A DNA stretch of 64,000 bases from Octopus bimaculoides (taxonomy: Eukaryota): the NCBI RefSeq assembly GCF_001194135.2, contig NC_068985.1, positions 18,191,142-18,255,141 on the forward strand, in the 5' to 3' direction. Made by a program: the position numbers and the translations under genes. Positions 4,103-62,061 of the stretch are shown piece after piece. Position 1 is the first letter of the stretch. Each line of letters opens with the position of its first letter. The notes under the pieces are model-generated. The model did no database searches and was not told where the DNA came from. It saw only the letters and a program-made list of their open reading frames with translations.

Positions 4103-4290
4103 NNNNNNNNNNNNNNNNNNNNNNNNNNNNNNNNNNNNNNNNNNNNNNNNNNNNNNNNNNNNNNNNNNNNNNNNNNNNNNNNNNNNNNNNNNNNNNNNNN
4201 NNNNNNNNNNNNNNNNNNNNNNNNNNNNNNNNNNNNNNNNNNNNNNNNNNNNNNNNNNNNNNNNNNNNNNNNNNNNNNNNNNNNNNNNNN

Positions 4291-4935: not shown

Positions 4936-5814
4936 TTCCTATAGATATAAATACACGTATTTAATATCTGTCTGCCTGTCTGTCTGTCTATATGTATGTA
5001 TGTATGTAGTGAGTAGGGATCTGGGAATTCAGGCGGCTACGATTACCGCAAGCAGCACTCTTGCGAACATTGTCTATCAGAATATGTAGGAATGGAAATT
5101 TCTAGAGTAGAAGCAACAGTTTCATTCAAACTGAAATTCCAGAAGTTTACCTTTAGTTGCAGAGTATAAATAATACGGAAAGAATAGAATTAATGTTAAA
5201 TTTATTCCACGGTTTACAATTGTATCAATAACGTGTTGTTGACAAGTCATACAATATCGTTGAAGATATGGGAGAGAGGAGCAATGATCCTGTCATATTG
5301 GTCATATTCGTATTATATAATGATTGTTTGTCAGTCATTATATAATACAAATTATTTAATCGATATGACAATATCGTTGGTTTCTTTCAAGTTTTCAAAG
5401 ATATTGTATGATCTGTTACACTCACATTATTGAAAATTTGTAAGCCATGAAATGAATGCAATACCAAAAACTATATTCTTCGTTTGTTTCATGTATGTGC
5501 ATGTGTGTGCGTATGTATAATACATACATACATATATATATATATANNNNNNNNNNNNNNNNNNNNNNNNNNNNNNNNNNNNNNNNNNNNNNNNNNNNNN
5601 NNNNNNNNNNNNNNNNNNNNNNNNNNNNNNNNNNNNNNNNNNNNNNNNNNNNNNNNNNNNNNNNNNNNNNNNNNNNNNNNNNNNNNNNNNNNNNNNNNNN
5701 NNNNNNNNNNNNNNNNNNNNNNNNNNNNNNNNNNNNNNNNNGACAGACAGACAGACAGACAGACAGAGACAGACAGACAGACAGAGAGACATGCAGACAG
5801 ACAGACAGACAGAC

Positions 5815-7590: not shown

Positions 7591-8204
7591 CACACACACA
7601 CACACACACACACANNNNNNNNNNNNNNNNNNNNNNNNNNNNNNNNNNNNNNNNNNNNNNNNNNNNNNNNNNNNNNNNNNNNNNNNNNNNNNNNNNNNNN
7701 NNNNNNNNNNNNNNNNNNNNNNNNNNNNNNNNNNNNNNNNNNNNNNNNNNNNNNNNNNNNNNNNNNNNNNNNNNNNNNNNNNNNNNNNNNNNNNNNNNNN
7801 NNNNNNNNNNNNNNNNNNNNNNNNNNNNNNNNNNNNNNNNNNNNNNNNNNNNNNNNNNNNNNNNNNNNNNNNNNNNNNNNNNNNNNNNNNNNNNNNNNNN
7901 NNNNNNNNNNNNNNNNNNNNNNNNNNNNNNNNNNNNNNNNNNNNNNNNNNNNNNNNNNNNNNNNNNNNNNNNNNNNNNNNNNNNNNNNNNNNNNNNNNNN
8001 NNNNNNNNNNNNNNNNNNNNNNNNNNNNNNNNNNNNNNNNNNNNNNNNNNNNNNNNNNNNNNNNNNNNNNNNNNNNNNNNNNNNNNNNNNNNNNNNNNNN
8101 NNNNNNNNNNNNNNNNNNNNNNNNNNNNNNNNNNNNNNNNNNNNNNNNNNNNNNNNNNNNNNNNNNNTATGCGGTCTGTACCTTTCGAAAAATATAACTA
8201 TATA

Positions 8205-10500: not shown

Positions 10501-11799
10501 GTCTATTACATAGGAGGAATTTCAACCATGTTTCGTGGTCTGCTACCACAACAGCTCCTTTATAGGATCCAGTTAGCTGAAGACATCATCAGGAGGAACC
10601 ACGTCCGGTTTCGGCCCCTACTCCTCTACCGTTTTGACGTGGCGGGGCCCCTCCTTTCGGAGGTGTCTTCAGCTCTGGTGTTGGGTGCATGTCTTCTTTC
10701 ACTGTTTGTGACTGTTCTAATTCAACTGTGGAATGTCCCTCGCTATGGTTATATATTCAAGCTAATCGATTTTTTAAATATTATTGGGTTCTCATCACTT
10801 GATCAATCCCAGAAAAGTAAATAGCCTGCCTCCTTATATATACAACAAATCCAATAGCTTCAGAGAATTGGAGCTACTAATTTGCATACTATCAGTATCT
10901 TATATCACCAACCTACATCATAAACACACACACACACCGCATACAATACACACACACAGTTACATAAATACATACATACATGCATACATACATACATACA
11001 TACATACATACATACATACATACATACACACATACATACATATATACCACATCTATCCATGGATTGATTATTCAAATTAACAGAAAGCTATAAATAACGC
11101 CAATGCAGCTGAGCAGGAGAAAACCGAGAACAGCTTATACAGAATTTGAGAAAAGCTTTCACCAAAAGCATGCAATGACTTCCTAGAATTTTTCGAGGTA
11201 ATAGAACCAGTGGCCATCAAGGAAATATTTGAGCTGATCTCGGCAATGAATGGAAAATGCAAAACGTCAATGCAAAAGATATGGAGAATTTACTAGTCTC
11301 GTAGTTAGAGTTTATTTCTTTAAAAAGCTGCAGGAGTTAGCAGAGCCATGTTTTTAAAGTGGAACTGGAAGACTCAAGAAAGAAAGAACTTTTACAACTG
11401 AAATCTTCCATATCAGCATCACCAAGATTACGGGAATCATAAAGTGGGATGTACGTTGCATGACTCTGACTGGAAGCGCAGTTGTAAGACAAAGAAAAGT
11501 GTTCTGGACGTGGTATGCTGTCGCTGTGAATTGCTTTATGAGTGAAGGTTCGTGAAAGACAGATGATATTCGATGCTTTCTTTGAAAAGAAACCAGCGTA
11601 CGAGGAAGAACTACAGTTTAAACATTCATTTAAACATTCATTTAGACATTCAGTGTAGATATAACATCATCTACTCTACTTGTCACTGGTGTTTTTTAAT
11701 CGAATTAACGGTGAGTAGACATTTGTATGCATAATTGAAGATGATTAACTTACATCATAATTTTATACCATTAGATCTTAATTAAAGTGTGTGTATGAT

Positions 11800-24882: not shown

Positions 24883-25436
24883 NNNNNNNNNNNNNNNNNN
24901 NNNNNNNNNNNNNNNNNNNNNNNNNNNNNNNNNNNNNNNNNNNNNNNNNNNNNNNNNNNNNNNNNNNNNNNNNNNNNNNNNNNNNNNNNNNNNNNNNNNN
25001 NNNNNNNNNNNNNNNNNNNNNNNNNNNNNNNNNNNNNNNNNNNNNNNNNNNNNNNNNNNNNNNNNNNNNNNNNNNNNNNNNNNNNNNNNNNNNNNNNNNN
25101 NNNNNNNNNNNNNNNNNNNNNNNNNNNNNNNNNNNNNNNNNNNNNNNNNNNNNNNNNNNNNNNNNNNNNNNNNNNNNNNNNNNNNNNNNNNNNNNNNNNN
25201 NNNNNNNNNNNNNNNNNNNNNNNNNNNNNNNNNNNNNNNNNNNNNNNNNNNNNNNNNNNNNNNNNNNNNNNNNNNNNNNNNNNNNNNNNNNNNNNNNNNN
25301 NNNNNNNNNNNNNNNNNNNNNNNNNNNNNNNNNNNNNNNNNNNNNNNNNNNNNNNNNNNNNNNNNNNNNNNNNNNNNNNNNNNNNNNNNNNNNNNNNNNN
25401 NNNNNNNNNNNNNNNNNNNNNNNNNNNNNNNNNNNA

Positions 25437-26830: not shown

Positions 26831-27693
26831 TAATCGTTACTCGCCGTTCGTTGTTTCATCAACACAGAGCCTATACAAACCCTTTTCCCACTCTTTCCTT
26901 CCTTGAAATGCAACTCTCTGGATCCCACTTGCTGCCTATGGCTTGAGCTAATAACCAGCTCTATCTAAGTCACTAAGTACAAATTTTAAAAATCTCTAAA
27001 TGTTTTCCCTAGCTCCAGAGGGGTCATAAAAGGTGGTGCTTAGCAGTGTTTTCAATATGATTGGGAAAGTAACAAATAAATTTCTCTTTGGTTAGAAAAT
27101 CAAGATTATCATAAATAAAATTCTCAGATGTGTTACTCGTTTCGAAAACCAATTAAACCTACAAATGGAGGATGTGTCGTCCACCTTCATGTTACCACAT
27201 ATTTACGCATGCTGAACTCATATATATATCGTTCGACTGACATTTAAACTTTAACTGTGTCGTCTGTTTTTCTTATATTCAAGGTTACTTTATCCACTAC
27301 ATTCGTCCATTTCTAAAACTATTGAGTAATATTTGGAAGATGTTCAATGTTTGTTGTGATGTTTGTTTCTTTGTTTTCAAAGGGATACTTGTTTCTTTAT
27401 GCTTGTTTTTATAGCCCAGATCAGCCCTAAGTGGCCATGATTTGCTCCATGATCAGAGTCGTTCAAACAGCAGAATGAGGCGATTGGGCGAACCGATTTG
27501 GACGCTGACGATTTGACATGGCTGACTGGACAGTCAACCTATTTTGATGTCAATAGTTCCTGTGCTAGAAGCAAACACACGCGCGCGTGCAGAAATATAC
27601 GCATACAGATAGAGAGAAGGTGGGTGAGAGACATTACACACACATAAAAAGAGAGAGAGTAAAAGAATATCAGAGAACATCTGATGTCACATA

Positions 27694-28086
27694 GATGTTG
27701 TTGTTGTTGGCACTCCGTCGCTTACGACGTCGAGGGTTCCAGTTGATCCGATCAACGGAACAGCCTGCTCGTGAAATTAACGTGCAAGTGGCTGAGCACT
27801 CCACAGACACGTGTACCCTTAACGTAGTTCTCGGGGATATTCACCGTGGCATAGTGTGACAAGGCTGACCCTTTGAAATACAGATACAACAGAAACAGGA
27901 AGTAAGACTGAGAGAAAGTTGTGGTGAAAGAATACAGCAGGGTTCGCCACCATCCCCTGCCGGAGCCTCGTGGAGCTTTAGGTGTTTTCGCTCAATAAAC
28001 ACTCACAACGCCCGGTCTGGGAATCGAAAACCCGATCCTATGATCGCGAGTCCGCTGCCCTAACCACTGGGCCATTGCGCCTCCAC
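27694..28086 (-). mobile_element. Full-length SINE family A with 11-bp TSD
   Basis: Reverse complement of the 14986 copy. GATGTCACATA lies at 27683-27693 and 28087-28097. Confidence 0.9.
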
Positions 28087-28924
28087 GATGTCACATAACT
28101 CAGCGTGGAATCAACAACACCAAATAGGCAGCGCCAGGCGGTTGTGCCAAATTGTCTTATATACTTTTAGCCCTCACTATCTCATTTTTGTTTTTTTTTT
28201 ATTTCAGAATCAGTGAAGCTAGTACTATATTACCTAATGTATATTTCTCCCTTTTAGCCACTTTGAAGGAGATCTGGCAGCGATTTCTAACAGATCGAAC
28301 AACCACCTTTGTTGGCTCCTTACTAGTTGTAATTGTTGACGATTCAGTCGCAGATATTTATTGCTGTTGTTGTTTTTGAAAGCATTTCCACAGTATCAAC
28401 TTAAGTACAAACTAAAATAAATGCATCTACTTTTGCAAGGATGTCGACAATTTATTTTAGTTTATTTTATTTCGCCGTTAGAGGAAAAGAGTCGATTACG
28501 TCGGCCAATTACTACTTTATCAGAATAATCAGTCTATACATTTTTCCTAGGCCCCCTGGGGTATATGGTCGATAAGGATGCTGGGTTTGAAATAGGAGGA
28601 ATCGTTCCCTCCAACCTGCTCTAAACTCTTCAGGACACTTAGTTTCCAATTTATTACGTTCCAGAACATTTGACGACTGACAAGGAGCTCGGTTTTTAAC
28701 ACTCATCTGACTCTTGTTCTTATTTGCATTTATTTATTTATTTATCCATTTATTTATTTGTTGTACTCTCTCAGATAATTCTACTTCTAAGTGGTTGCAT
28801 ACATGGTTCTGTTCTAATTCTCTGATTCCAACGTCAAAACATATCTTCATAATTATTAATTTACTACTATTATCATGATCGTTTATCTTCCATATCGAGG
28901 TATTTTTTTTTCAAGAGGTCCTTA

Positions 28925-29082
28925 AGGCTGTGTAGCTAAGAAGGTCGCTTTGCAGCCTAGAGATTTAGAGTTCGGTCCAACTGAGTGGCACCTTGAGCAA
29001 GTAACTTCTACTATAGGTCCAAGTTGACCAATGCCTTGCGATAAATTTGGCTGACAGAAACTGTGTGGAAGCTTGTCGTCTA
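28925..29082 (+). mobile_element. SINE family C head
   Basis: GGCTGTGTAGCTAAGAAG...GGCACCTTGAGCAAGTAACTTCTACTATAG. Confidence 0.65.
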
Positions 29083-29230
29083 TATATATATGTATATATA
29101 TATATACGCATATATAATTATATAAAAATCGAACGCACATACACAATGTGTGTGTTGTTAGTTCGTGGGTCGGCTGCGTTTTTAGGCGTAATATATTCTC
29201 AATGCACCTGGTGTTAAAACACCTGAAAGT

Positions 29231-29469
29231 AATTATTTACATTATTTACATTTGACCTCATCTTGTTTGTTGTTAATACAACGTTTCGGCTGATATACCT
29301 TCCAGCCTTCATCTTGGGGAAATTTCCAACCTGGGTTCTCATTCCTAAGGTATTCTTCGATTTTGTTGTTGTTGTTATTATTATTATTATTCAGGTCACT
29401 ACCTGGAATCGAATTCGGAATCTTGGGGTTAGTAGCCCGCGCTCTTAACGACTACGCCATATGCCCGTG
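29231..29469 (-). mobile_element. Second copy of the tRNA-head/PLE-tail SINE, hammerhead core deleted
   Basis: Homologous to 13661-13951. The minus strand reads AAGA[deleted CACCTGA]TGAAGGCTGG...CAGCCGAAACGTT. There is no inverted 5' tail. Confidence 0.8.
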
Positions 29470-29769
29470 ACGAATATATAGAGAGAGAAGGTCTCGCTTA
29501 TACTAATCAAAGCAAAGTAGTTAGCGATAATGCTAAAATTTCATGCTATCATAAGTTTCCATTCCATATTACTAGGAGGAGGGATATTTTGAAAATGAAT
29601 CTGGTGACAAATAGATTTTATAGGAGGTAATCAGTAATTATTATTAGAAGCATAGGACGTAATAAACTTCTTTTTTTCTTTCTTTTTTTAAGTGAATTGA
29701 TTATAATTAGATTAAGAAGTCAATAACCAAATAGTATTTAGTTTATGCCACCCAAAACATGTCAAAATA

Positions 29770-29940
29770 AGAGGTGCGTTCAAAAAGTATCCGACTATTT
29801 TTTCCCGCCTACCGAACAAAATCCTTTGGATAGGAGGTGACGCCACTCTTCCTGTGCATGCGTTAAAATATTCGCGCCTGTAGACCGCGTCAGTTCCTGC
29901 CTGTTACGGCTGGAGTGCATGCGTGTAATGTGCTACTGCG
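29770..29940 (+). mobile_element. Mariner-like terminal fragment
   Basis: GAGGTGCGTTCAAAAAGTATCCGACT resembles a mariner TIR. No partner TIR was found. Confidence 0.35.
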
Positions 29941-30072
29941 CCTTTATATGTTTGTGTGTGTATGCGCGCGCTAATGAAGATATGCTGAAATAATTATTTT
30001 CTCTCACTAACTCTTGCTCTCTCTTTCTCTCTGAGTAACACCATCTTTCTTTCTTTCTCCCTAGCTATAAAA

Positions 30073-30256
30073 ATGCGAGTTTCCTGTAGAATAAGCTTAT
30101 GGGCAATTGTTTTATTGCTGTACCTAGAAACAGTTGTATCTCAGCTGACTGATAAATCTAATATGGAACAATTCGACAAGTGGTCTTTCCTGCCAGAAAA
30201 TACTCCAGATAAAAGCAAACAACACTCGAATGAAGCTCGCTATATAAGAGCGACAC
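30073..30256 (+). CDS. Prepro-neuropeptide, coding exon 1 (signal peptide and pro-region)
   Basis: Acceptor TTCTTTCTCCCTAG just upstream of the ATG. Encodes MRVSCRISLWAIVLLLYLETVVSQ (hydrophobic signal). GTAAGT donor at 30257, phase 1. Confidence 0.85.
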
Positions 30257-31624
30257 GTAAGTATATTTTCTTTCTGCTTTTTTCTGTGTTCCCAGAATGC
30301 AATTTTGTTCAGCCAATGATTAGGCATCAAATAATCCTTGAATTAGCAAACTAGCTCCCCGTTTACAATATATATTGAGGGCAAAGCGCACTGAATAACC
30401 AGTAGGAGGAGGAGTCCTCCTGGGGTTAAAATAACAGTATCGTCTATTCTTGCAAAACATCCACGTTTAGGTGGCGATAAACAATCCTTGAATTAATCGT
30501 TCGAAATTGGTGACCATATCTGAACAGGTATTTCTGGTTGATTATCAATAATTATTTTAATAGTTTAGAGAAGGAGGAGGTAGTTATCTTCAAAGTAAAG
30601 TGGGCTCCGCTAAAGGTACGTAAGGACCCATTGTTAGTGTTAAACCACTGTATGAACAAGAAGGTCCTTCTGACGGCCTCCACACAGTTTCCGTCTGTCA
30701 ACCAACCTATGCTCAGAAGGCTTTGCCCTACCAGCGGCTATGACAGAAGATACTTGCTTCAGACGCCGTGCTGTGCGAATGAACCTGAAACCACACAGAT
30801 ACAACGTGCAATTGTACTAAGTTGGACAAAATAGAACAGAAGGAAGGTAAAGTGTGGGAGCAATAAAACAGTACCATGGAAAATATATTTGGAATTTTTT
30901 TATGCTTATCAATCATTCAGCGTGTCATGCGATCTTGTTGTCTATTGACCAATTTCCCTGGATCTTTATTCATAATCATTTATCTTGAAGAAGCATTTAG
31001 ATATTATTCTCATTTATACAAAGCTCATAATGTTATATATCAAAAATTGGAACTGACTAGTAGCTTTTAGTGTTTCTCGGAATCCATTCAGTAAAAATAA
31101 CTGAAGAAGTATAAAAATTTAAAAAATTGAAGGTTGTTACTGTATTGTGAGAAAGATTTTCTGATGAAGGATATTGATTGAAACGCATGGTGTTTCTTTT
31201 TGCTTTGTTTTCTTTGTTTGTTTGTTTGTTTTTTTTGTCTTTTTTATGTTTTTCTCAAAGTTCGCAGAGAAACTTCAATTTTGTTTTCACACATTTCATT
31301 GAGTAAAAATAAAATCGCCCCAAACACGCTGCAACGTTGTTAATCAATTAAATTAAGTAAGATATTGATTTAACAAACGAAAGCATAAATAAAAATATTA
31401 ATTATTGAGAGAGATCTCCATATAATGAATATTTTGTTTTCTCAACTCTCTTAACAAATCTTGAAATGCAACCTCCCTGTATATAAACTACACTTCCATA
31501 ATGTGTGAAACAATATTTAACTCGACTGACAGATCATAAAATTATAATAGAATTGATTGTAAGATCATAGAAGTTAGGAAATTGTGAAACCTTCGTTATT
31601 ATCATTGAGCTGTTTAAGACGACG

Positions 31625-31790
31625 AGGGGCAGAATCGTTAGCATGCCGGATAAAATGCCTAGCGGCGTTTCTTCCGGCTCTACGTCCTAAGTTAAAAAAT
31701 TATGCCTTACCTTTCATCTTATCGCGGTCGATACAAGAAGTGCCAGTTGAGCAATAAGTGGCGATGTAATCGACCAGCCCCTTCCCACCG
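31625..31790 (+). mobile_element. V-domain-type SINE (degraded)
   Basis: GGGGCAGAATCGTTAGCATGCCGG...CCTTACCTTTCATCTTATCGCGGTCGATA. Confidence 0.6.
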
Positions 31791-31944
31791 AAATTCGCTT
31801 AATTCTAGATTTGCTATTTATTGCAATATGGTACAATGTTGTCACATCATTTTAAGAGTTTACTCGATGTCTCCATAACGATCCACAAATTGTCGAAACA
31901 TAGAGTCTGAATTCTTTTTCAACTCTATACAAAACTTTATAAAA

Positions 31945-33378
31945 CTTAGATATGTTTCGACCAAAGATTGGCCCAGGCCATGTTTAACTTAATAGCACTG
32001 CCTGACAGGATTATCTAAATCCTTTTTAAGTCAAGTTTTATGATATCATGGTCTATTCGAGTAGGGAGTTCTTGTTGAGTGAGTTGTATCCAGGTATAGG
32101 TGGTTTATCTGGTATTCCTTGAAGAAATTTGTCCAGATTCCGTTTAAAGGTGATGGGATCCTTTTCCTCTTTAATCTGTCTTGGGACAATGTTAAATAGG
32201 GCAGGGCCTGTTGAGGAAAAGAAATTGTGTTGCAGTGTATTTATGTGTTGTGATCCTGAATTGCGTAGGGGACTATGGCCCGTAGTCCTAGCCTTGGATG
32301 ATTTTTGAAGCTAATGTTGAGATCGTTTAGGCAATGCTGGTGGTATATTCTTCACATCGTGCAAATGCTGTATCGCTCGCGGCGGCGCTGGAGAGAATAG
32401 AGTTTCAATGCTTTAAGGCGACCTCAATAATCGAGATCAGTCATGCCCTTAATTCGTTTAGTGAATGCCCTCTGGGGTGATTCAATTTTCGAGATGTTTT
32501 GTTTTGTATAGGGAGACTGCAGGGGGCAGCAGTATTCGAGGTGTGGCCGTACAAAGGAGAGACAAGTGGAATGATGATCCCTTGTTCTCTTGACTGGAAG
32601 GTTCTTAAGATCCAGGAGCTCATTCTACGAGCCATATCGACCTTATTGTTGATGTGGGCACTCCAACTGAGATTGTTATCAACAATTACTCCTAGGTCTC
32701 TGATATTATTAGATGCTGTGAGAGGTTTCCCTAAAGGAAGAGAGTATGGTTGTTTTAGTATAGTCTTTTTTCCAAAATGCATCAGCTCAAATTCTCCCTC
32801 GTTTAGTTGCATTTTGTTTTTGTCTGCCCATTAACTCACCGCATGTAGATCAGACTGGAGTTGAGTTCGGTCTTCTTCTTCATTGATGATTTTCTGGAGC
32901 TTAGTGTCATCAGCAAATATTTCCACTTTGCTGTGTTTTACGACGCTGGAAAGGTCATTTATATAGATTATAAAGAGGAGCGGGTCCAAGACAGTCCCTG
33001 AGAGACACCACTAGTGACTTTTGCTGGGCTTGAGTGGACTCCATCGACCACAACATGTGTTCTGTTCGCCAAGAAATATTCAATCCAGTGTAGAAGTTTT
33101 CCACGGATTCCAACATTTGACAATTTTGAGAGTAAGATATGGTCAACTCTGTCGAACGCTTTACTGAAGTCAAGATATATGACATCAGAGTTCGAACCTG
33201 TTCCCAAGGCTTTAAGTATATCATCGATGTGGAGTAAGAGCTGTGTTAGACAGTCCCTGCCACAGCGAAAACCATGCTAATTTTCATTTAGGGGTTTGTG
33301 GATATCCAGGAAGCCAGCTATCCTTGACCTTACCACTCTTTCAAACACTTTAATGATATGGGAGGTGAGTGAGATATA
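31945..33378 (-). mobile_element. 5'-truncated CR1-clade LINE (RT domain and 3' end), frameshifted
   Basis: ISLTSHIIKVFERV, DVIYLDFSKAFDRVDH, SGVSQG, IFADDTK, RDLGVIVDNNLSW and DKFLQGIPD motifs. It lies antisense in intron 1 of the neuropeptide gene. Confidence 0.9.
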
Positions 33379-33536
33379 AAAATGTATTTGAAATTTTTTT
33401 ATGCTTTTCAATCTATATAAATTTACACTTTTCAATCTATATAAATTCCGTAATACTGATTGTGAAACAAATAATTAAGAAAAATAAACTGATATTGAGA
33501 TAAATATTTTGCTTATTGTTGATATTTATCTTTCAG

Positions 33537-33569
33537 AAATTCTGGTACCCAGATGGAAGAAACGAATTG
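33537..33569 (+). CDS. Prepro-neuropeptide, 33-nt micro-exon 2 carrying the KKR cleavage site
   Basis: Acceptor TATCTTTCAG and donor GTGCGT. Phase 1-1, encodes (Q)ILVPRWKKRI(G) and keeps exons 1 and 3 in frame. Confidence 0.72.
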
Positions 33570-33669
33570 GTGCGTATTTTCCAATTATCTGTTTACAGAT
33601 TCTATTTATGAAAGGATAAGAACTAAATAAATAAGGAAACTGCATACGTTATGTTAATACCATGCTATC

Positions 33670-34125
33670 CTTATTGTAATTCTTGTTGTCGTCGTCGTCG
33701 TTTTACTTTTCAGAGCGCTCGGTTTTATTTGCTCTGGATGATTCTGTGAGAGCCTGTTGTCAAGGGTCTCACGGGGTCCCTTTCTGCACATTATAAGCTT
33801 TGATACTTGGTTGTTAATTATCGTGGAAGACATTCAACATCCAAGTACCAATCTCAAAATCCTAGCTGTCTCCAGCAGAGCAGTTTTGTTGTGGGAGTTG
33901 GGGCTTGCTCTGTTCTCACGTTAATTCCAATTTCCCTGACATATTTCTCGAACTTGGTTGTTAGTGCTCCGAGTGCCCCTACGATTACTGGAATGGCAGA
34001 CACTCTCCTCATAGTCCACATTCTTGCAATTTCGTCTTTTAGTAGTCTGTACTTTTCAATCTTTTCTAGTTCTTTGTCACTTATGCGTGCATCCCCAGGT
34101 ATTGTAATATCTATAATCTTGGTTT
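33670..34125 (-). mobile_element. R4/Dong-clade LINE 3' end (restriction-like endonuclease domain)
   Basis: The minus strand encodes IIDITIPGDARISDKELEKIEKYRLLKDEIARMW...IPVIVGALGAL, followed by a UTR and a short repeat tail. Confidence 0.8.
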
Positions 34126-34979
34126 CTTTTTTTTTTTTTACCTTATCTTCAAATATTTACCTCCTCATATAGAAAACCTTTCTTTGATTTCCTTAACTGT
34201 CTTCTGTTTCTCTACCTCTAGGTATTTCCCCTCCATAACATCAACATAGAACATGAATAGAAACGTTATTTTCCATTCATTTCCAAACTTTTCTTTATGT
34301 ATCAATTTCAATTTTAATCAACGTCATCTATCTTTTGCTGTTGTTGTTTATTGAACTCATTAAATATTTTATTGATTTATTTAAATTCACGCATGAAAAT
34401 TGTTTCAGTTTAAAAAGAGATTACTTAAAACGTTTCTCAACTAATATGAGTATCTATTAGTTTTCGAGAAAATTCCATCCTTATTCACAGCTGTTTTTTG
34501 AAATTCTTTGTCCTATAGCTGAGAATATTTCACATATAACATCCGCTTAATTAATGCGAGGACATAGTATCACATTTCGAAGTTCGATTGTAAAAACAAC
34601 TTATATTGTTTGATTTTAATTTAACTTGCGTATATTCTAAAGAACCATTGTTCATTTTGGGAACAAGTAACAGGAAACAGATTGAGTTTCACCTTGATTA
34701 GTCAAAGACAGGAATATCAAACTAAATGTCAGTTTTAATTTCTAATACTTTACAATTGCCCTAAATACTGCAGCTATAAATATTTTTATCAAAGTACTCT
34801 TCAGTGCCATATGCAAGATATGTGCTATTAATTGTATTCTCACTTTTTTTGTCTTTTTCTCTGAAATTCTTCGAAATTTGTTTACAAAGAAGCAAAGCGA
34901 AACGATAATAGTAGTAAAAGTATTTATATACATACATGCATACATACATACTTCAGCAATGTAACTACACACATGCTGT

Positions 34980-35150
34980 GGGCGATTTCTTTTTCTTTCT
35001 TGTACTTTTCTCTCTCTCTCTCCTTTCCGACGAAGAGCTATACTCGAAACGTCAAAAACTCTCTCCTTTTACTGAACGTCAATCTAATTCATTCCCTGTG
35101 CACGTTCTCTTGTTGTCTGCTATTGTTAATTTTATTATTCGTTTATTTGA
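34980..35150 (+). mobile_element. PLE-tail-like repeat with variant hammerhead motif (35024-35056)
   Basis: TTT-CCGACGA-A-GAG-CTATA-CTC-GAAAC-GTC-AAA. Confidence 0.6.
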
Positions 35151-35152
35151 AT

Positions 35153-35217
<65 letters not shown>

Positions 35218-35417
35218 NNNNNNNNNNNNNNNNNNNNNNNNNNNNNNNNNNNNNNNNNNNNNNNNNNNNNNNNNNNNNNNNNNNNNNNNNNNNNNNNNNN
35301 NNNNNNNNNNNNNNNNNNNNNNNNNNNNNNNNNNNNNNNNNNNNNNNNNNNNNNNNNNNNNNNNNNNNNNNNNNNNTGTGGTATTGTCCGTACAACTCAA
35401 AGTAAGGTGAATAAAAT

Positions 35418-36644
35418 CAAAATAGCAACAGGATAGCAACAGGATAGCAAGAGGTATTGCAGTGCGACCGTTTCAAGTGACTCCATTTAATTGAACAATA
35501 CAATCATTACATCAGTTTAAATCCGGGGCTATCCTCAGCTGCATAAATAAGTAAAAAATTTTAATCAGTTGAACACATTAATATAATTTTACTTAAATTC
35601 TCTAATAGAGCAAGAAGAGGGGAAAAGTCCATGTTGCTACTAATGAAGCTCAAAATATACTACACTTCTAAAAACTTATGAAGTTTGTTAGGGCCATAGC
35701 TTGTAAAGGATTGTGATTCATTTTTAATTTATTAGTCTTTTTTATCAACTACCAAATCTAAGGCTAGAGGACAATGTCTGTTTAGAATGGATAGACGGAG
35801 TGAGTTGACAGTTTATAGTTGAGTATGGTCATAAATATTGTCGTGATTTTAAGAAATGTGTAAGTAATTGTCTATAAAGAAGGCTGTAGGGGAAAACCCT
35901 AAATCAAGATGTTAATTACCAGTTAAAGGGGCAAGACGCTAATAAAACCTAGGATGTTAATACAGAGGAAATTATCATGGGGTACAATGGATGATTGTAT
36001 ATAAACAATATTGTTATATTGTATGACGATAAAATTTAAGATTACGAAAAATGATATTATAACCAGAATAGATAAACTGTGTATATATAGCAATTTTCAA
36101 CATTAAAAAGGGAAGATTATATAGAATTAGTTTAATATTCATTCCTGTACTTAATTATTTACTTATAAGGTGGTTTTCTATAAAGATTGCTCTGGATATT
36201 TACTTATAGAATACTGGGGCAATAAATCATGCTCTCTTTATATTAATTGTAAGCTAAGAATCAGAAAAAAATCAGAAAAATAAGTTGTGCACAAATACGT
36301 ACTCATATTTAACTATGTGCACACAAGCAAATATACACAAATATTTGTAATTTATTATGGATATGCTATAATCAACTCTTCTAGACTTAAGTAACTAGAA
36401 AGTTTATATTTCTCTTTGAGAACATTAATAACTAGATTTAGGGTTTTTTTCCCTCTTCTTGCTCTATTAGTGAATTTAAGTAAAATTATATTAATGTGTC
36501 CAACTGATTAAAAAAATTTGTTTATTTAAGCAGCTGAGGATAGCCCTGCATTCAAATTCATGTAATGGTTGCATTGTTCAATTAAATGGAGTCGCATGAA
36601 ACGGTCGTACTGCATCACCTCTTGATATCCTGTTGCTTATTTTG
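35418..36644 (+). mobile_element. Putative decayed Penelope-like element with inverted terminal tail copies
   Basis: About 210-bp inverted arms (35418-35630 and 36441-36644). The right arm has GCAG-CTGAGGA...GAAAC-GGTC-GTA-CTGC. The interior is AT-rich and only weakly coding-like. Confidence 0.5.
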
Positions 36645-36698
<54 letters not shown>

Positions 36699-36699
36699 A

Positions 36700-36918
36700 C
36701 ACGAAGGAGTGCTGAGAAGTTCCTGGCTTTGGGTAAAAAAATATAGGAGGATCAGTGAATTATGATTTTATTCAACATATTCCCCTCTCAGATCCACACA
36801 CCTATTGCAGCGCTCCTTCAATTTGTCTAAACCCTGTGAAAGAACTCGGGAGGTTGAGCCTCCAGCCAGGCCTTTCACGATACCACTAAAGCCATGAGCT
36901 TTTCAACATCCCCTCGTA
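36700..36918. mobile_element. Mariner-derived MITE
   Basis: TIRs ACGAAGGAGTGCTGAGAAGTTCCTGGCTTT and AAAGCCATGAGCTTTTCAACATCCCCTCGTA. Confidence 0.75.
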
Positions 36919-37056
36919 TCCAGCTAGGGAGTTAATCCTACGACGAATCGACGCTTCGTTCAGGAGTGAGGGAGTATTGTAATCTGTCAGTCAGTCGCAC
37001 GCCATTCAAACCGGGTCTTATGAGTCTTAGGGCTCGTGACAGACTTAAGTCGTACG

Positions 37057-37087
<31 letters not shown>

Positions 37088-37329
37088 AAGAGGAGGAGGA
37101 GGATGCAGTTGTTGTTTATAAGTATGATGACGATGATGATGGTTCACAACTCAAGTCGTTCTGCTTCATTAGGTATAGACAAAAATGTAACTGGCCCAAT
37201 GAGTCAGAATGTCACGTGTGTTGCCGTCGGTGTTTCATAAATGTTTCATTGGTTTCTTTTTATTCTTAAATTTTTGAATAATTTTACCTTTTTCTTTTCT
37301 TTTTTTTTCTTTTTCTTTCATTCCCCCAG

Positions 37330-37487
37330 GATTCGCTGGTTTGGATAATATGGATGTCATGACCTCCGTTTTAGAGCATACTCGGCAAAAAGACACCTCC
37401 ATGGACTTAAGGAAAATACGAAATCATAACCCACCTCTACATTTGTCTCCGATGGATGTCCGCCGGCTGTTGGAAGCCGGCAAATAA
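37330..37487 (+). CDS. Prepro-neuropeptide, exon 3: mature peptide ending in an amidation signal (CRF/DH44/ELH-like)
   Basis: Long polypyrimidine tract ending CCCCCAG. Encodes (G)FAGLDNMDVMTSVLEHTRQKDTSMDLRKIRNHNPPLHLSPMDVRRLLEA-GK-stop. Confidence 0.82.
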
Positions 37488-37926
37488 GGATGATTACTTA
37501 ACATGATAGTGACAGAAATACTTGGCAAATGTTTAGAATATTTTCTTTTTCCTAGAGTCTCTCACTACAAATTGGAGGATCTGAAGCCACATTTTTTAAA
37601 TCTTCTCTCTGTATGAAATTTCATTCCATTACAATTTACTATGTACTAGCGTCTGATAGTAAACATATCAAAGCAAATATATTGAAACTTTTGCAATTTA
37701 TCCAAGGTTTAAAATTAAAATGTTCAAAGCAAATGTATGCTGTGTGTTTATTTTTATTATTATTTCATTCCATTTGTAATTCTGTGCTTTTCTTTGTTCA
37801 TTAATCAATCGTTTCAAACTTTTTGTTTTTGTATTGTATTTTGTATTTTCATANNNNNNNNNNNNNNNNNNNNNNNNNNNNNNNNNNNNNNNNNNNNNNN
37901 NNNNNNNNNNNNNNNNNNNNNNNNNN

Positions 37927-37957
<31 letters not shown>

Positions 37958-38574
37958 ACAGTGGTCCAGTGCTTCAATAAGTTTTATGAGTCAGAAAAAA
38001 TTAGGCTCTCGATTATTAGGTAAAAGAGTGGGTATATTATTATTTATAACATCCACTTAATTAATTAATTAATTAATTAATTATGTAATATTGTAGTCCT
38101 ATAACATCCAGTTATCAGCATATCACCAACTGGTGTCATGCTGATAACCTTCCAGAGGCGGGGTGGAACGTTTTCAGCATGAAAACTTTCGGTAACATTA
38201 ATTGGTTGTTATGATACTATGGTGTTGTATAAATAATGTGTGTTTGTGTGTATGTGTATACGTATACATATAAACTATATTATATAAATATTCCGGTATG
38301 TTGGAACTTGTCGGTCAGACTTGATGATGTTAGCACCTGTTAGAGCTGGCCTGAACATCTTTTTTGTGGAAAACTACCAGTTGCCCATAGCTGAAATCTC
38401 CCCATGTCATTGATGTTGCTAAAGAGAAAGGCCACCGCTTAAGGGTTTGTCCAGCTTGGCAGCAACGCTGTCGCAGGCGTTACCGTCAGAACGCAAAGGG
38501 CTGAAATAGACATTACAAGACATCTTGTCCGATGGTCTAACTGTTCCATCAATCTACTCCTTTGGGTTGATCCT

Positions 38575-38690
38575 TTATTTTACAACCCCTGAAGGATGAA
38601 AGGCAAAATGACCTCGGTGGGATTTGAACACAAGGTGCAGACAGTTACAATAAATACTGCAAGGATTCTATCCAACGCTCTAACGACGCG
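38575..38690 (-). mobile_element. V-domain-type SINE fragment
   Basis: GAAGGATGAAAGGCAAAATGACCTCGGTGGGATTTGAAC. Confidence 0.6.
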
Positions 38691-38711
38691 GGTAAAGCAA
38701 AAATAGTCTTT

Positions 38712-39160
38712 GCCTTTTATCTTTTACTTGCTGCCATCATTGGACTGCGGCTCCGTCCTGAGGGGCTTAGTCAAACAAACAGACCCCAGTACTAATTTTT
38801 TAAGGCAGGTACTTATTCTAGCTGTACTTTTGACGAAACGCTAAGTTACGTGGGCGTAAACTAACCAATACCGATTGTGGAACGGTTGTAGAGGACAAAC
38901 GCAAGCACAAAGACACACATATACACCCCCACACAGGTATATGTATATGTATACACACACGCACACACACATATTTATATGTATACATATATATACACAC
39001 ACACAACGTGTGGGGGGGGGCGGCAGTCTTCTTTCAGTTTTCGTCTACCAAATTCACTCACATGACATTGGTTGATCCGGGACTTTAGCAGAAGACACTC
39101 GCCCACAGTGGGACTGAACCCGGATCCACGTGGTTGCAAGCAAGCTTGTTCGCCATACAG
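38712..39160 (-). mobile_element. Full-length SINE family C with internal microsatellite
   Basis: Tail at 38712-38910, (CA/TA)n middle, head at 39025-39160. Confidence 0.75.
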
Positions 39161-39904
39161 ACAGTTTAGCATGCTATTAAACTTCAACGTCCAATAGGAA
39201 ATCGTTCGTGTTGTGAATGCGACAAATTTGACAAATATGAAGTTTCCATGTTGTTCAACAATGCTTTTACAACTAGCTACGTCATTTAACACCTGCTAAC
39301 AAATAAATTTCGTATTTGTTTCCATCCGAACCAGTTAAATTTGCTGCAAGAACAAGAAAAGCTGTAAAGAAAAGAAAATTTTGCTTGCAAATGTGAAAAT
39401 ATTAGACAATAGATCTTTTTCAAAATATGTATGAACAACTTATGATTTCGTTTCTTACGTTCTTAAGTGGTTCATTCATATTTTTCTGCATCAATAATGA
39501 CTGCAGTGTTTCTTCTAGATATTTTATTATCAAGATTCCTCTGTTATATATATATATATATATAAGAATGGTTTAAATAGCTTAAGTTTCACGCTTTAGC
39601 AAAACTTCAACTCACTCAACCCATCAATATTGCAAAAGAGATTCTTACGTTTACACGTAAGTGTCATTTATTCAAAATAAATAACAAATGAGCAGATAAA
39701 ATGACAAGCACAGACTATTGAATATATTTTGTTCATTTGATAGCTATTTCCATCGACCTTGCTGCTGTTGTTGCTGCTGCTGCTGCTGTTGTTTGCAGTG
39801 CTTCAAAACTATCAATATCAACCGTGTAGCCTGTCGTTGAGGTTTTTAAATGCCTAATAACGTAACTAAGAAGAAACATGAGAGATAATGCAATATAGTT
39901 CTCG

Positions 39905-40070
39905 TTGTGCGGCTAAGAAGTCAGCGCTTCGCATCCAAGTGGTTTCAGGTTCAGTCCCACTGCGCGACAATTTGCACAAGTATCTTTTTTGCTATAGCCC
40001 TGGGCCGACTAAAGCCTTGTGTATGAATTTCACTGATGGAAAAATGTGTGAAAGTCCATTGTGTATACTT
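39905..40070 (+). mobile_element. SINE family C head
   Basis: GGTTCAGTCCCACTGCGCGACAATTTGCACAAG...GGGCCGACTAAAGCCTTGTG. Confidence 0.65.
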
Positions 40071-40099
40071 GTGTGCGTGTGCATGTGTGAGTATACGTG

Positions 40100-40137
<38 letters not shown>

Positions 40138-40632
40138 CTTTATTACCCACAAGGGGCTACACACAGAGGGGACAAACAAGGACAAACAAACATATTNNNN
40201 NNNNNNNNNNNNNNNNNNNNNNNNNNNNNNNNNNNNNNNNNNNNNNNNNNNNNNNNNNNNNNNNNNNNNNNNNNNNNNNNNNNNNNNNNNNNNNNNNNNN
40301 NNNNNNNNNNNNNNNNNNNNNNNNNNNNNNNNNNNNNNNNNNNNNNNNNNNNNNNNNNNNNNNNNNNNNNNNNNNNNNNNNNNNNNNNNNNNNNNNNNNN
40401 NNNNNNNNNNNNNNNNNNNNNNNNNNNNNNNNNNNNNNNNNNNNNNNNNNNNNNNNNNNNNNNNNNNNNNNNNNNNNNNNNNNNNNNNNNNNNNNNNNNN
40501 NNNNNNNNNNNNNNNNNNNNNNNNNNNNNNNNNNNNNNNNNNNNNNNNNNNNNNNNNNNNNNNNNNNNNNNNNNNNNNNNNNNNNNNNNNNNNNNNNNNN
40601 NNNNNNNNNNNNNNNNNNNNNNNNNNNNNNNN

Positions 40633-61176: not shown

Positions 61177-61960
61177 TTATAGACTGATTTCAATTGGAGT
61201 TGTTTTGGTTTTATTAATTTTAAAATGTTCGACAGTATCAATATCTATGGAATGTCGTCTCATCAAATGTGCTTTTAGGTTGCCTTTTGTTGTGCTTTTA
61301 TAGTCACAAACATGACATGCAAATGGTTTTTCATGGGTGTGCAAACGAATATGAACTTTCAAATGGTCTTGTTTTTTAAATGTCCGTCCACAATAAAGGC
61401 ATGACCATTTGCGCTCGCTATTATGACAATTATAAATATGCTTTTGAAGACAGTTTTGGATCTTGTATGTCCGGCCACAATGTTCACACATGAAATGTGC
61501 TTCTTCTTTATGAAACTGTTGTATATGCTCAGTAAGGCCACGTTTCCTTATAAATTCTGCATTACAGAACTCGCATTTGAAGAGGGTGCAGTTAGCTGGC
61601 AATGGCACAGCATGCTGAAAATATCGATGAAAAGGTAAATAATCAGGATTTTGAGAACTGAAACCACATTCTATACAAGAGTTGCTATTGGCAATATTCT
61701 CACCACTGGAGTGACTACCAACTACAACAAATTCTGGAATATCATCTAAGAGAACATTGTGCACATTTCTCAAATGTGACACAACAATTTCGGCAAATAG
61801 GAATGAGGTATGGCAGATTGTACAGATGAATTCCACTTTATCACTGGAGGCAGTGGCACCGATTTGTCCAATAACCATCTTTTCCTGAGAATCACATTCT
61901 TCAATTTCATAGACCGTTGGAGATGAACTACTCTCTAATTCCACCTCAATAGGATTGCTG
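61177..61960 (-). CDS. Terminal coding exon of a C2H2 zinc-finger protein (about 6 fingers)
   Basis: Uninterrupted ORF with C-x2-C-x12-H-x3/4-H repeats, including CLYCGRTFKKQDHLKVHIRLH-THEKPF-ACHVCDYKSTTKGNLKAHLMRRH. Tandem acceptor TTTCAG/CAG at 61961 and 61958. Upstream exons were not found in the window. Confidence 0.88.
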
Positions 61961-62061
61961 CTGAAATGATAGAGGAAAACAAAAATTAATCGAGGAAAAT
62001 AAGTGTTATTCTTCAAAATGGTTAAAACTTCAAAACACAGCTTTGAATAAAAAGTAATTTA

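What the first reader, a model, noticed from the sequence alone, without database searches (positions are those of the whole stretch)
30073..37487. Hidden three-exon neuropeptide precursor encoding a 51-aa amidated CRF/DH44/ELH-like peptide
Seen: consistent phase-1 splicing yields 124 aa, with a signal peptide, an acidic/basic pro-region, KKR, then IGFAGLDNMDVMTSVLEHTRQKDTSMDLRKIRNHNPPLHLSPMDVRRLLEA-GK-stop. Known: CRF/DH44/ELH precursors have a long helical peptide after a dibasic site and a C-terminal Gly plus basic amidation signal. RRLLEA-amide resembles Aplysia ELH RQRLLEK-amide, and MTSVLEHTR resembles CRF LREVLEMAR. Inference: a divergent, longer family member with a proline-rich insert. 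The ORF track misses it.
Basis: partly seen in the sequence, partly recalled or inferred. Interest (0 to 1): 0.7.

Follow-up and report, generated by a model that had tools for sequence, protein, structure and literature searches.

The report
Unnamed octopus amidated peptide-hormone precursor gene
This is a real octopus gene, already modelled in public databases but unnamed, that encodes a secreted precursor of a long amidated peptide conserved in other cephalopod-like transcripts. Its claimed kinship to CRF/DH44/egg-laying hormone fails every sequence test, yet octopuses keep two receptors of that type and no ligand has been reported for them.

Summary
The three phase-1 exons exist exactly as described: 30073-30256, 33537-33569 and 37330-37487. 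Spliced, they give a 124-aa protein identical to RefSeq XP_014773869.1, "uncharacterized protein LOC106871753" of Octopus bimaculoides. The gene is therefore modelled already, but unnamed.

The assembly gap at 35218-35376 lies inside intron 2. Gap-free O. sinensis and O. vulgaris loci show collinear flanks 74 and 55 nt apart, filled by (TA)n and non-coding sequence.

Two more distant transcripts carry the same architecture. KKR and Gly-Lys are invariant, the two ends of the peptide are 67-68% identical, and the pro-region is 18% identical. dN/dS is 0.03 for the peptide and 0.67 for the rest. A secreted, amidated regulatory peptide precursor is well supported.

Membership of CRF/DH44/ELH is not supported. 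A profile of 26 lophotrochozoan DH44/ELH peptides gives true members from left-out clades mostly 14-22 bits. It gives the cephalopod peptides -1.4 to +1.7 bits, which is shuffle level. hhalign, Pfam and the PDB chain library find nothing.

Octopus nevertheless retains two CRHR/DH44R-type receptors, while the literature reports ELH/DH44 as lost in cephalopods. The peptide is thus a testable candidate ligand.

The KKR cleavage site sits on a 27-33-nt microexon that one transcript lacks.

The parts
11560..11710 (+). Upstream 5' exon, non-coding in O. bimaculoides. Its donor is ACG|gtgagt at 11711. The 5' boundary is not determined.
   Evidence: The N-terminal extension of O. sinensis isoform X1 (P0006) maps here at 88% aa identity. 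Sequence and donor were read. The stretch is 96.7% identical in nucleotides to the first exon of the O. sinensis locus L005.
30065..30256 (+). First coding exon. The acceptor is ccctag|CTATAAAA, the ATG is at 30073 and the donor is CAC|gtaagt. It encodes residues 1-61 plus one base (phase 1): the signal peptide and most of the pro-region.
   Evidence: The 'AIK' residues that precede the Met in P0001 and P0006 show that this acceptor is used. The exon is 96% identical in O. sinensis and O. vulgaris.
30073..30141 (+). Predicted signal peptide, MRVSCRISLWAIVLLLYLETVVS, with cleavage expected after Ser23 (V at -3, S at -1).
   Evidence: Read from the sequence. S23 and Q24 align with VES|Q in P0007, and P0009 has VKS|R at the same place. 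AlphaFold2 models an N-terminal helix over residues 3-36. No SignalP run was possible.
33537..33569 (+). A 33-nt frame-preserving microexon encoding (Q)ILVPRWKKRI(G). It carries the only basic cleavage site directly upstream of the peptide.
   Evidence: The same length and splice sites occur in O. sinensis and O. vulgaris. The homologous 27-nt exon is present in L001 and precisely absent from L003.
33566..37478 (+). Coding span of the predicted 51-aa peptide IGFAGLDNMDVMTSVLEHTRQKDTSMDLRKIRNHNPPLHLSPMDVRRLLEA. It runs from 33566-33569 across intron 2 to 37330-37478.
35218..35376. Assembly gap (159 N) inside intron 2. It sits over a (TA)n microsatellite and is not coding.
37330..37487 (+). Last coding exon. 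It encodes residues 73-124: the peptide, Gly123 (amide donor, 37479-37481), Lys124 (37482-37484) and TAA (37485-37487).
37714..37719 (+). ATTAAA, a candidate polyadenylation signal 227 nt after the stop codon.
   Evidence: This is a pattern match only.

Best explanation
LOC106871753 is a gene of at least four exons for a secretory prepropeptide. Detectable relatives are limited to Octopus species and two unidentified, more distant transcript sets, which are probably decapodiform cephalopods.

Inferred processing:
1. The signal peptide is removed after Ser23.
2. A prohormone convertase cuts after Lys69-Lys70-Arg71, a site encoded on the 33-nt microexon.
3. Carboxypeptidase removes Lys124.
4. 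Peptidylglycine alpha-amidating monooxygenase converts Gly123 into a C-terminal amide.

The product would be a 51-residue peptide, IGFAG...RRLLEA-NH2. Its N-terminal ~22 and C-terminal ~9 residues are conserved and predicted helical, and they flank a variable linker. The pro-region behaves as a spacer that drifts nearly neutrally.

Conserved ends around a variable middle in a long amidated helical peptide are what a two-site ligand of a secretin-type (class B) GPCR looks like. The most likely mode of action is therefore as a neurohormone or neuropeptide acting on such a receptor. The two retained CRHR/DH44R-type paralogues are the first candidates.

The peptide cannot at present be filed in CRF/DH44/ELH or in any other described family.

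Shown: gene structure, splicing, conservation pattern, purifying selection, presence of the receptors. Inferred: each processing step, amidation, secretion, neuronal expression, the receptor class.
For: Gene and splicing:
- The spliced CDS equals RefSeq XP_014773869.1.
- The orthologous ORF is uninterrupted in transcript-like contig L001.
- The exons are 96-97% identical in O. sinensis and O. vulgaris.

Precursor logic, octopus against P0007:
- signal peptide 35% identical
- pro-region 18%
- KKR 100%
- peptide N-terminal 22 residues 68%
- peptide middle 30%
- peptide C-terminal 9 residues 67%
- Gly-Lys 100%

Selection between L001 and L003 (78% nucleotide identity): the peptide has 21.5 synonymous against 5.5 non-synonymous differences, omega 0.03. 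The signal peptide plus pro-region has omega 0.67.

Structure: AlphaFold2 at low confidence (pLDDT 54) puts helices at 78-93, 99-105 and 113-123 and leaves the pro-region disordered.

Receptors:
- A Mytilus CRHR query finds O. vulgaris, Argonauta and O. sinensis proteins at 43-46% identity and E 1e-92 to 1e-98. They rank above all vertebrate CRHRs and above Aplysia CRFR1.
- O. bimaculoides has two such paralogues, XP_014771477.1 and XP_014778785.1. The cluster representatives compared (O. vulgaris P0045 and O. sinensis P0051) are 54% identical to each other.

Literature: no ELH/DH44 was found in any cephalopod dataset (PMC6425005). This protein is absent from that paper's supplementary catalogue.
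Against: - There is no expression, peptidomic or localisation evidence. The tissues of runs SRR24189501 and SRR29271471 are unknown, and the gene IDs do not appear in the papers or supplements searched.
- No recognised family matches in Pfam, the PDB chain library or the DH44/ELH profile, so the receptor class is inferred from shape alone.
- The structure model is of low confidence.
- A conserved internal basic site (L-R-K in octopus, L-R-R-K in P0007 and P0009) could split the 51-mer.
- One transcript lacks the microexon and with it the KKR site.
- Only five distinct sequences support the conservation analysis.
Confidence: 0.72

Rival explanations
1. The peptide is the true but hyper-divergent cephalopod orthologue of lophotrochozoan DH44/ELH (the CRF family). 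It would be the cognate ligand of the two octopus CRHR/DH44R-type receptors.
For: - The receptors are retained and duplicated in octopods, while no other ligand candidate has been reported (PMC6425005).
- CRF-like immunoreactivity has been reported in the O. vulgaris optic lobe (Suzuki et al. 2003, as cited in PMC12607849).
- A transcript annotated as CRHR2 is expressed in O. maya white body and heart (PMC6522055).
- The general format fits: a single long amidated helical peptide at the C-terminus of a short precursor, with conserved ends.
- The C-terminal D-[VL]-R-[RK]-L-L-E motif scores weakly positive against family C-termini (p 0.05-0.14).
- The cross-phylum pairwise test has little power, because Aplysia ELH itself fails it against CRF and insect DH44 (p 0.26).
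Against: - The within-Lophotrochozoa profile test does have power. Gastropod, annelid, nemertean and 'type 1' molluscan members left out of the model mostly score 14-22 bits, with a minimum of 4.4. The cephalopod peptides score -1.4 to +1.7, which is shuffle level.
- The family's N-terminal LS[IV]N..L..LA.ML motif is absent; an N-core HMM scores -0.6 bits or less.
- hhalign gives probability 0.3%.
- Pfam CRF and ELH models give no hit.
- At 51 residues the peptide is longer than the 31-42-residue members compiled here.
- Other orphan secretin-type receptor groups exist in lophotrochozoans (PMC8557429; PMC7200681), so CRHR is not the only possible target.
Confidence: 0.3
2. The 51-residue segment is not the final product. 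Cleavage at the conserved internal basic site (Arg100-Lys101 in octopus, Arg-Arg-Lys in the distant homologues) would give a 28-residue non-amidated N-terminal peptide and a 20-21-residue amidated C-terminal peptide. Each would carry one of the two conserved blocks.
For: - L99 and R100 are invariant and the next residue is always basic.
- The two conserved blocks lie on either side of this site.
- This would explain the unusual total length.
- AlphaFold2 breaks the helix between residues 93 and 99.
Against: - From general knowledge of prohormone convertase specificity, RK is the least-used dibasic site, and in octopus it is followed by Ile.
- Accepted DH44/ELH peptides contain uncleaved internal RKR, RRR and RQR runs (sequences).
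- The middle region is still under constraint within the L001/L003 pair, with 4.5 non-synonymous against 9.5 synonymous differences.
Confidence: 0.3
3. It is a secreted peptide with a non-neuroendocrine role, for example a salivary or venom component, an antimicrobial peptide or a reproductive or chemical cue.
For: - No tissue information is available.
- Cephalopod salivary glands express many neuropeptide-like precursors (bioRxiv 10.64898/2026.02.02.703354).
Against: - The net charge is 0 or -1 and amphipathicity is modest, unlike cationic antimicrobial peptides.
- Omega of 0.03 on the peptide is opposite to the diversifying pattern that is usual for toxins and pheromones (the comparison rests on general knowledge).
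- The amidation signal and tribasic site are conserved across deep cephalopod divergence.
Confidence: 0.08
4. It is a chance alignment of open frames and splice-like motifs, or an artefact of the assembly gap, and not a gene.
For: None was found. The only prior concern was the N run inside the span.
Against: - An identical RefSeq model exists.
- Orthologous models exist in two other Octopus genomes.
- Spliced transcript contigs exist in more distant species.
- The coding sequence is under purifying selection.
- The gap is intronic and its flanks are collinear in gap-free relatives.
Confidence: 0.01

Closest known systems
Lophotrochozoan DH44 / gastropod egg-laying hormone (ELH) precursors (De Oliveira et al. 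2019, PMC6425005)
   Same: - A signal peptide, then spacer, then a dibasic site, then a long cysteine-free helical peptide ending in Gly plus basic residue(s) for amidation.
- A C-terminus rich in R/K-L-L.
- The receptor type for this family is present in octopus.
   Different: - It lacks the defining N-terminal LS[IV]N..L..LA.ML motif and scores at shuffle level against the family profile.
- It has one peptide copy, against 1-16 in that family.
- It has 51 residues, against the 31-42 of the members compiled here.
- The cleavage site is on a microexon.
- The literature reports this family as absent from cephalopods.
Vertebrate CRF/urocortins and arthropod DH44 (Pfam CRF, PF00473)
   Same: - A long amidated amphipathic peptide with conserved N- and C-terminal thirds and a variable middle.
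- A short VLE..R stretch and an R-[RK]-L-[LM]-E stretch can be lined up by eye.
   Different: - Pfam gives no hit at E<=10.
- The PDB chain library, which I expect from general knowledge to hold CRF and urocortin chains, gives nothing for the profile.
Other ligands of secretin-type (class B) GPCRs: PDF/cerebrin, calcitonin/DH31, PTH/glucagon/PACAP-like
   Same: - Long, largely helical peptides, often amidated, read by a two-domain receptor.
- Several lophotrochozoan receptors of this class are still orphans (PMC8557429; PMC7200681).
   Different: - There is no sequence match in Pfam or among PDB chains.
- It lacks the Cys pair of calcitonin.
- It is much longer than PDF.

Membership tests
CRF / DH44 / ELH peptide family | Secretory precursor in which the peptide is bounded by an N-terminal basic cleavage site and a C-terminal Gly plus basic amidation signal | tested here: met
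   KKR lies before the peptide. It ends in GK-stop in Octopus and GKRR-stop in P0007 and P0009. These residues are invariant in the alignments. The feature is shared with most amidated neuropeptides, so it is not specific to this family.
CRF / DH44 / ELH peptide family | N-terminal activation motif: lophotrochozoan LS[IV]N..L..LA.ML, or arthropod and vertebrate [PS]-[LI]-S-[IL]-D/V...L-L-R | tested here: not met
   The full-length family HMM scores the cephalopod peptides -1.4 to +1.7 bits, against 4.4-36 bits (mostly 14-22) for left-out true members. The N-core HMM scores -0.6 bits or less. An end-anchored PSSM gives p = 0.07-0.31.
CRF / DH44 / ELH peptide family | C-terminal receptor-ECD-binding motif, roughly N-[RH]-x-[RK]-[LIF]-[LF]-x-x-amide | tested here: inconclusive
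   An end-anchored PSSM of family C-termini scores 0.75-3.1 bits, against a family leave-one-out median near 8 bits and a minimum of -2.3. The p value against shuffles is 0.05-0.14.
CRF / DH44 / ELH peptide family | Recognition by curated family models (Pfam CRF PF00473, Pfam ELH) or by profile-profile comparison | tested here: not met
   Pfam gives no family at E<=10 for four precursor or peptide queries. hhalign of the cephalopod alignment against the DH44/ELH alignment gives probability 0.3%, E 0.21.
CRF / DH44 / ELH peptide family | Peptide length typical of the family (about 30-46 residues) | tested here: not met
   The cephalopod peptides have 51 residues (49 in the microexon-less P0009 if counted from IAGLD), against 31-42 in the 26 compiled members.
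CRF / DH44 / ELH peptide family | A cognate CRHR/DH44R-type class B1 receptor is present in the same genome | tested here: met
   The two O. bimaculoides proteins XP_014771477.1 and XP_014778785.1 belong to clusters whose representatives hit Mytilus CRHR at 43-46% identity and E 1e-92 to 1e-98, inside a hit list made up almost entirely of CRHR and diuretic-hormone receptors. This condition is necessary but not sufficient.
CRF / DH44 / ELH peptide family | The peptide activates the CRHR/DH44R-type receptor | not testable with these tools
   This needs a heterologous receptor assay.
Generic neuropeptide / peptide-hormone precursor | Signal peptide, conserved processing sites, and purifying selection concentrated on the predicted product rather than on the spacer | tested here: met
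   Region-wise identity is 18% for the pro-region and 67-68% for the peptide ends, with KKR and GK at 100%. Omega is 0.03 for the peptide and 0.67 for signal peptide plus pro-region. The signal peptide was judged by the (-3,-1) rule and hydrophobic core only.
Generic neuropeptide / peptide-hormone precursor | Expression in neurons or endocrine cells, and detection of the processed peptide | not testable with these tools
   The papers and supplements searched contain no mention of the gene or the peptide. The tissues of the Logan runs are unknown.

The most novel reading that the evidence does not exclude
This peptide is the 'missing' ligand of the cephalopod CRHR/DH44R-type receptors. Under that reading the ELH/DH44/CRF system was not lost in Cephalopoda, as published, but diverged beyond sequence recognition. 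In addition, release of the peptide would be gated by alternative inclusion of a 27-33-nt microexon that carries the prohormone-convertase site.
Probability: 0.27. Interest if true: 0.75.

Novelty: new member of a known kind. Interest (0 to 1): 0.5.

Why it matters
Cephalopod reproduction, feeding arrest and post-spawning death are under neuroendocrine control, yet the inventory of cephalopod peptide hormones is incomplete.

A published molluscan survey concluded that ELH/DH44, the family that triggers egg laying in gastropods, was lost in cephalopods (PMC6425005). I show here that octopuses still carry two receptors of that type, which leaves those receptors without a known ligand.

This gene supplies a concrete, synthesisable candidate with defined variants: the 51-mer amide, the 28-mer and the 21-mer amide. 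That turns the question into a direct receptor-pairing experiment.

If the peptide instead acts on another orphan class B receptor, it would define a new cephalopod peptide family.

The placement of the cleavage site on a skippable microexon is an unusual way to control whether a precursor can be processed.

Tried and rejected
1. Assembly artefact. Rejected: the gap is intronic and collinear with gap-free relatives.

2. More distant relatives.
- An exhaustive phmmer search of 1.84 billion representatives gave three hits.
- A profile search of 5.8 billion proteins gave four.
- Nothing outside these cephalopod-like sequences was found, and no bridge to DH44 appeared.

3. DH44/ELH membership. The profile HMM with leave-one-clade-out controls, pairwise Smith-Waterman against shuffles, hhalign and end-anchored PSSMs were all negative or marginal.

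The result was not significant, and the test lacks power because Aplysia ELH also fails it.

5. An alternative register. The best local alignments repeatedly placed the cephalopod C-terminal segment against the N-terminal motif of DH44. An N-core HMM gives -0.6 bits or less, so I rejected this (where the script stopped after that result).

6. Pfam on four queries and the PDB chain library gave nothing meaningful.

7. AlphaFold2 reached only pLDDT 54. I did not run a fold search, because a low-confidence short helical model gives meaningless matches.

8. Literature. Gene IDs, peptide strings and SRA run numbers returned nothing.

9. The ORF at 32441-32812 (-) looked like a retrotransposon fragment by eye, but Pfam gives no hit, so I make no claim about it.

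Full report
**What is there**

The window is 64 kb of draft Octopus bimaculoides chromosome. It has 36% G+C and 16 runs of N. Locus L004, fetched from GCA_001194135.2 CM046605.1:18218214-18231628, is base-for-base identical to window 27073-40487. The window is therefore CM046605.1:18,191,142-18,255,141.

| Exon | Coordinates | Length | Junctions |
|---|---|---|---|
| 1 (CDS) | 30073-30256 | 184 nt | donor CAC\|gtaagt |
| 2 | 33537-33569 | 33 nt | acceptor ctttcag\|, donor G\|gtgcgt |
| 3 | 37330-37487 | 158 nt with TAA | acceptor cccccag\| |

All junctions are phase 1.

That protein is identical to RefSeq XP_014773869.1/70/71 and XP_052824124.1, "uncharacterized protein LOC106871753". The gene is therefore not hidden from public annotation. 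It is modelled but unnamed.

**The gap**

The N run 35218-35376 lies within intron 2. It is 1,649 nt downstream of the microexon and 1,954 nt upstream of exon 3, so no reading frame crosses it.

The chromosome-scale O. bimaculoides record has the same Ns, so I used the gap-free orthologous loci of O. sinensis (L005) and O. vulgaris (L006).
- The 500 nt on each side of the gap align collinearly in both species, 74 and 55 nt apart.
- The intervening sequence is a (TA)n run followed by non-coding sequence with stops in all three forward frames.
- Exon order is the same in both species, and the microexon is 33 nt with the same splice sites.

**Fuller gene structure**

The ATG exon starts at a splice acceptor, ccctag|CTATAAAAATG at 30065. 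The N-terminal extensions of the O. vulgaris and O. sinensis models end in "AIK-M", which shows that this acceptor is used.

The extension of O. sinensis isoform X1 maps to window 11573-11710 at 88% identity. A donor, G|gtgagt, follows at 11711. The gene therefore spans at least 11.56 to about 37.7 kb, with a 5' exon 18 kb upstream.

An ATTAAA lies 227 nt after the stop codon.

**Relatives and selection**

An exhaustive phmmer scan of 1.84 billion representative proteins gave three hits. A profile search of 5.8 billion gave four.

The hits are the Octopus cluster, a genomic read-through from another octopod (P0002/L002), and two Logan contigs from unnamed runs:
- P0007/L001 (SRR24189501), 41% identical
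- P0009/L003 (SRR29271471)

L001 carries the whole ORF uninterrupted, which shows that a spliced transcript exists.

Conservation between octopus and P0007 follows the pattern of a peptide precursor:

| Region | Identity |
|---|---|
| Signal peptide | 35% |
| Pro-region | 18% |
| KKR | 100% |
| First 22 peptide residues | 68% |
| Peptide middle | 30% |
| Last 9 peptide residues | 67% |
| Gly-Lys | 100% |

L001 and L003 are 78% identical in nucleotides. Between them the peptide has 21.5 synonymous and 5.5 non-synonymous differences (omega 0.03). The signal peptide plus pro-region has omega 0.67.

AlphaFold2 at low confidence (pLDDT 54) models helices at 78-93, 99-105 and 113-123 and leaves the pro-region disordered.

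I conclude that the C-terminal 51 residues are the functional product of a secretory precursor. The processing steps themselves are inferred, not shown. They are signal peptidase after Ser23, convertase at KKR, carboxypeptidase, and amidation of Ala122 from Gly123.

**The microexon**

L003 lacks exactly the 27 nt that in L001 lie where the octopus 33-nt exon lies: CATAA|...|GAATTGCAGG.

This exon encodes the KKR site. Skipping it is frame-preserving and in octopus would give ...RAT-R-FAGLD..., with no dibasic site. In P0009 the nearest upstream site is QKKR, 17 residues earlier.

L001 and L003 come from different species. The data therefore cannot distinguish alternative splicing from lineage-specific loss.

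**Is it CRF/DH44/ELH?**

I took 26 mature DH44/ELH peptides of molluscs, annelids and nemerteans from Supplementary note S2 of De Oliveira et al. 2019 (PMC6425005).

- Profile HMM. The cephalopod peptides score +0.2 to +1.7 bits (E 0.02-0.05 for a single comparison), and 10-17% of shuffles reach this.
- Leave-one-clade-out controls. The test has power. Most left-out members score 14-22 bits, with a range of 4.4-36. The same models give the cephalopod peptides -1.4 to +1.3 bits.

| Left-out clade | Scores of true members (bits) |
|---|---|
| Gastropod ELH | 14.4-19.2 (one at 4.6) |
| Annelid DH44 | 14.1-16.6 (one at 4.4) |
| Nemertean | 5.7-21.8 |
| Molluscan 'type 1' | 9-36 |

- Pairwise local alignment against shuffles: p = 0.26-0.88.
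- hhalign: probability 0.3%.
- End-anchored motif tests: p = 0.05-0.14 for the C-terminus and 0.07-0.31 for the N-terminus.
- Pfam: no family at E<=10.
- PDB chain library: nothing for the profile and only chance hits for one sequence. I expect that library to hold CRF, urocortin, PTH and glucagon-type chains.
Aplysia ELH also fails this test (p 0.26), so the test is uninformative.

If this is a family member, it is far more divergent than any accepted lophotrochozoan member.

**Why the hypothesis is still worth testing**

De Oliveira et al. state that no ELH/DH44 sequence was retrieved from any cephalopod database, including the O. bimaculoides proteins. They propose loss of the family in Cephalopoda. 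The present protein is not in their supplementary catalogue.

A Mytilus CRHR sequence (PMC7200681 supplement) nevertheless retrieves octopod proteins inside a hit list made up almost entirely of CRHR and diuretic-hormone receptors:

| Protein | Species | Identity | E-value |
|---|---|---|---|
| P0045 | O. vulgaris | 46% | 5e-98 |
| P0047 | Argonauta hians | 46% | 3e-95 |
| P0051 | O. sinensis | 43% | 2e-92 |

All three rank above all vertebrate CRHRs and above Aplysia CRFR1.

The two clusters contain O. bimaculoides XP_014771477.1 and XP_014778785.1. The cluster representatives (O. vulgaris P0045 and O. sinensis P0051) are 54% identical to each other.

Other reports add context. A CRHR2-annotated transcript is expressed in O. 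maya white body and heart (PMC6522055). CRF-like immunoreactivity was reported in the O. vulgaris optic lobe (cited in PMC12607849).

The receptors therefore exist without a known ligand. However, other secretin-type receptor groups in lophotrochozoans are also orphans.

**Verdict**

| Claim | Assessment |
|---|---|
| The observation (exons, splicing, peptide) | confirmed |
| Precursor of a secreted, amidated regulatory peptide | well supported, confidence about 0.7 |
| Member of CRF/DH44/ELH | defining sequence features tested and not met; about 0.3 remains as a functional or orthology hypothesis because of the orphan receptors |

A conserved internal basic site (LRK or LRRK) leaves open that two shorter peptides are made rather than one 51-mer.

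I file it as a new, unclassified member of the known kind 'amidated peptide-hormone precursor', with moderate interest.

Noticed in passing
window 33537-33569; L001 569-595 compared with L003 near 343: The prohormone-convertase site (KKR) lies entirely on a frame-preserving microexon of 27-33 nt. One of the two distant transcripts lacks exactly this exon, which removes the site. Microexon inclusion could therefore decide whether the peptide can be released.
   Followed up: partly
window 37410-37418 (codons for L99-R100-K101); P0007 and P0009 have 'LRRK': A conserved internal di- or tribasic site splits the 51-mer between its two conserved blocks. Cleavage there would give a 28-mer and a 20-21-mer amide.
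   Followed up: partly
window 11560-11710 (+): An upstream 5' exon lies 18 kb before the ATG exon. In O. sinensis it is read as an alternative N-terminal extension (isoform X1, 173 aa). In O. bimaculoides the public models give only the 124-aa product, so the exon is treated as non-coding there.
   Followed up: partly
not in the window: O. bimaculoides XP_014771477.1 and XP_014778785.1: Octopods carry two CRHR/DH44R-type receptor paralogues. The cluster representatives compared (O. vulgaris P0045 and O. sinensis P0051) are 54% identical. A published survey of family B receptors reported a single CRHR-like gene in molluscs (PMC7200681).
   Followed up: partly
window 61177-62016 (-): A 279-aa ORF contains several C2H2 zinc fingers (Pfam zf-C2H2, E 8e-14). 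It is probably one exon of a C2H2 zinc-finger gene, a family I recall as greatly expanded in octopus.
   Followed up: partly
window 606-1316 (-) and 48443-48787 (+): These ORFs resemble DNA-transposase remnants. The first has helix-turn-helix matches (HTH_32, DUF4817) below Pfam's cut-offs. The second has no Pfam hit.
   Followed up: partly
window 4103-4290, 5547-5741, 7615-8167, 20952-21321, 24883-25435, 35218-35376 and others: Most of the 16 assembly gaps are flanked by (TA)n, (CA)n or (CT)n microsatellites. For the one gap I tested, relatives show that the missing piece is only about 55-75 nt, against 159 Ns written.
   Followed up: partly
peptide residues 33-51 of Obim and P0007: The best local alignments repeatedly put the cephalopod C-terminal segment (..NPPLHLSPMDVRRLLE / ..NHDIVLNDLRKLLE) against the N-terminal motif of DH44/CRF peptides, not against their C-termini. 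A motif HMM did not support this register.
   Followed up: yes
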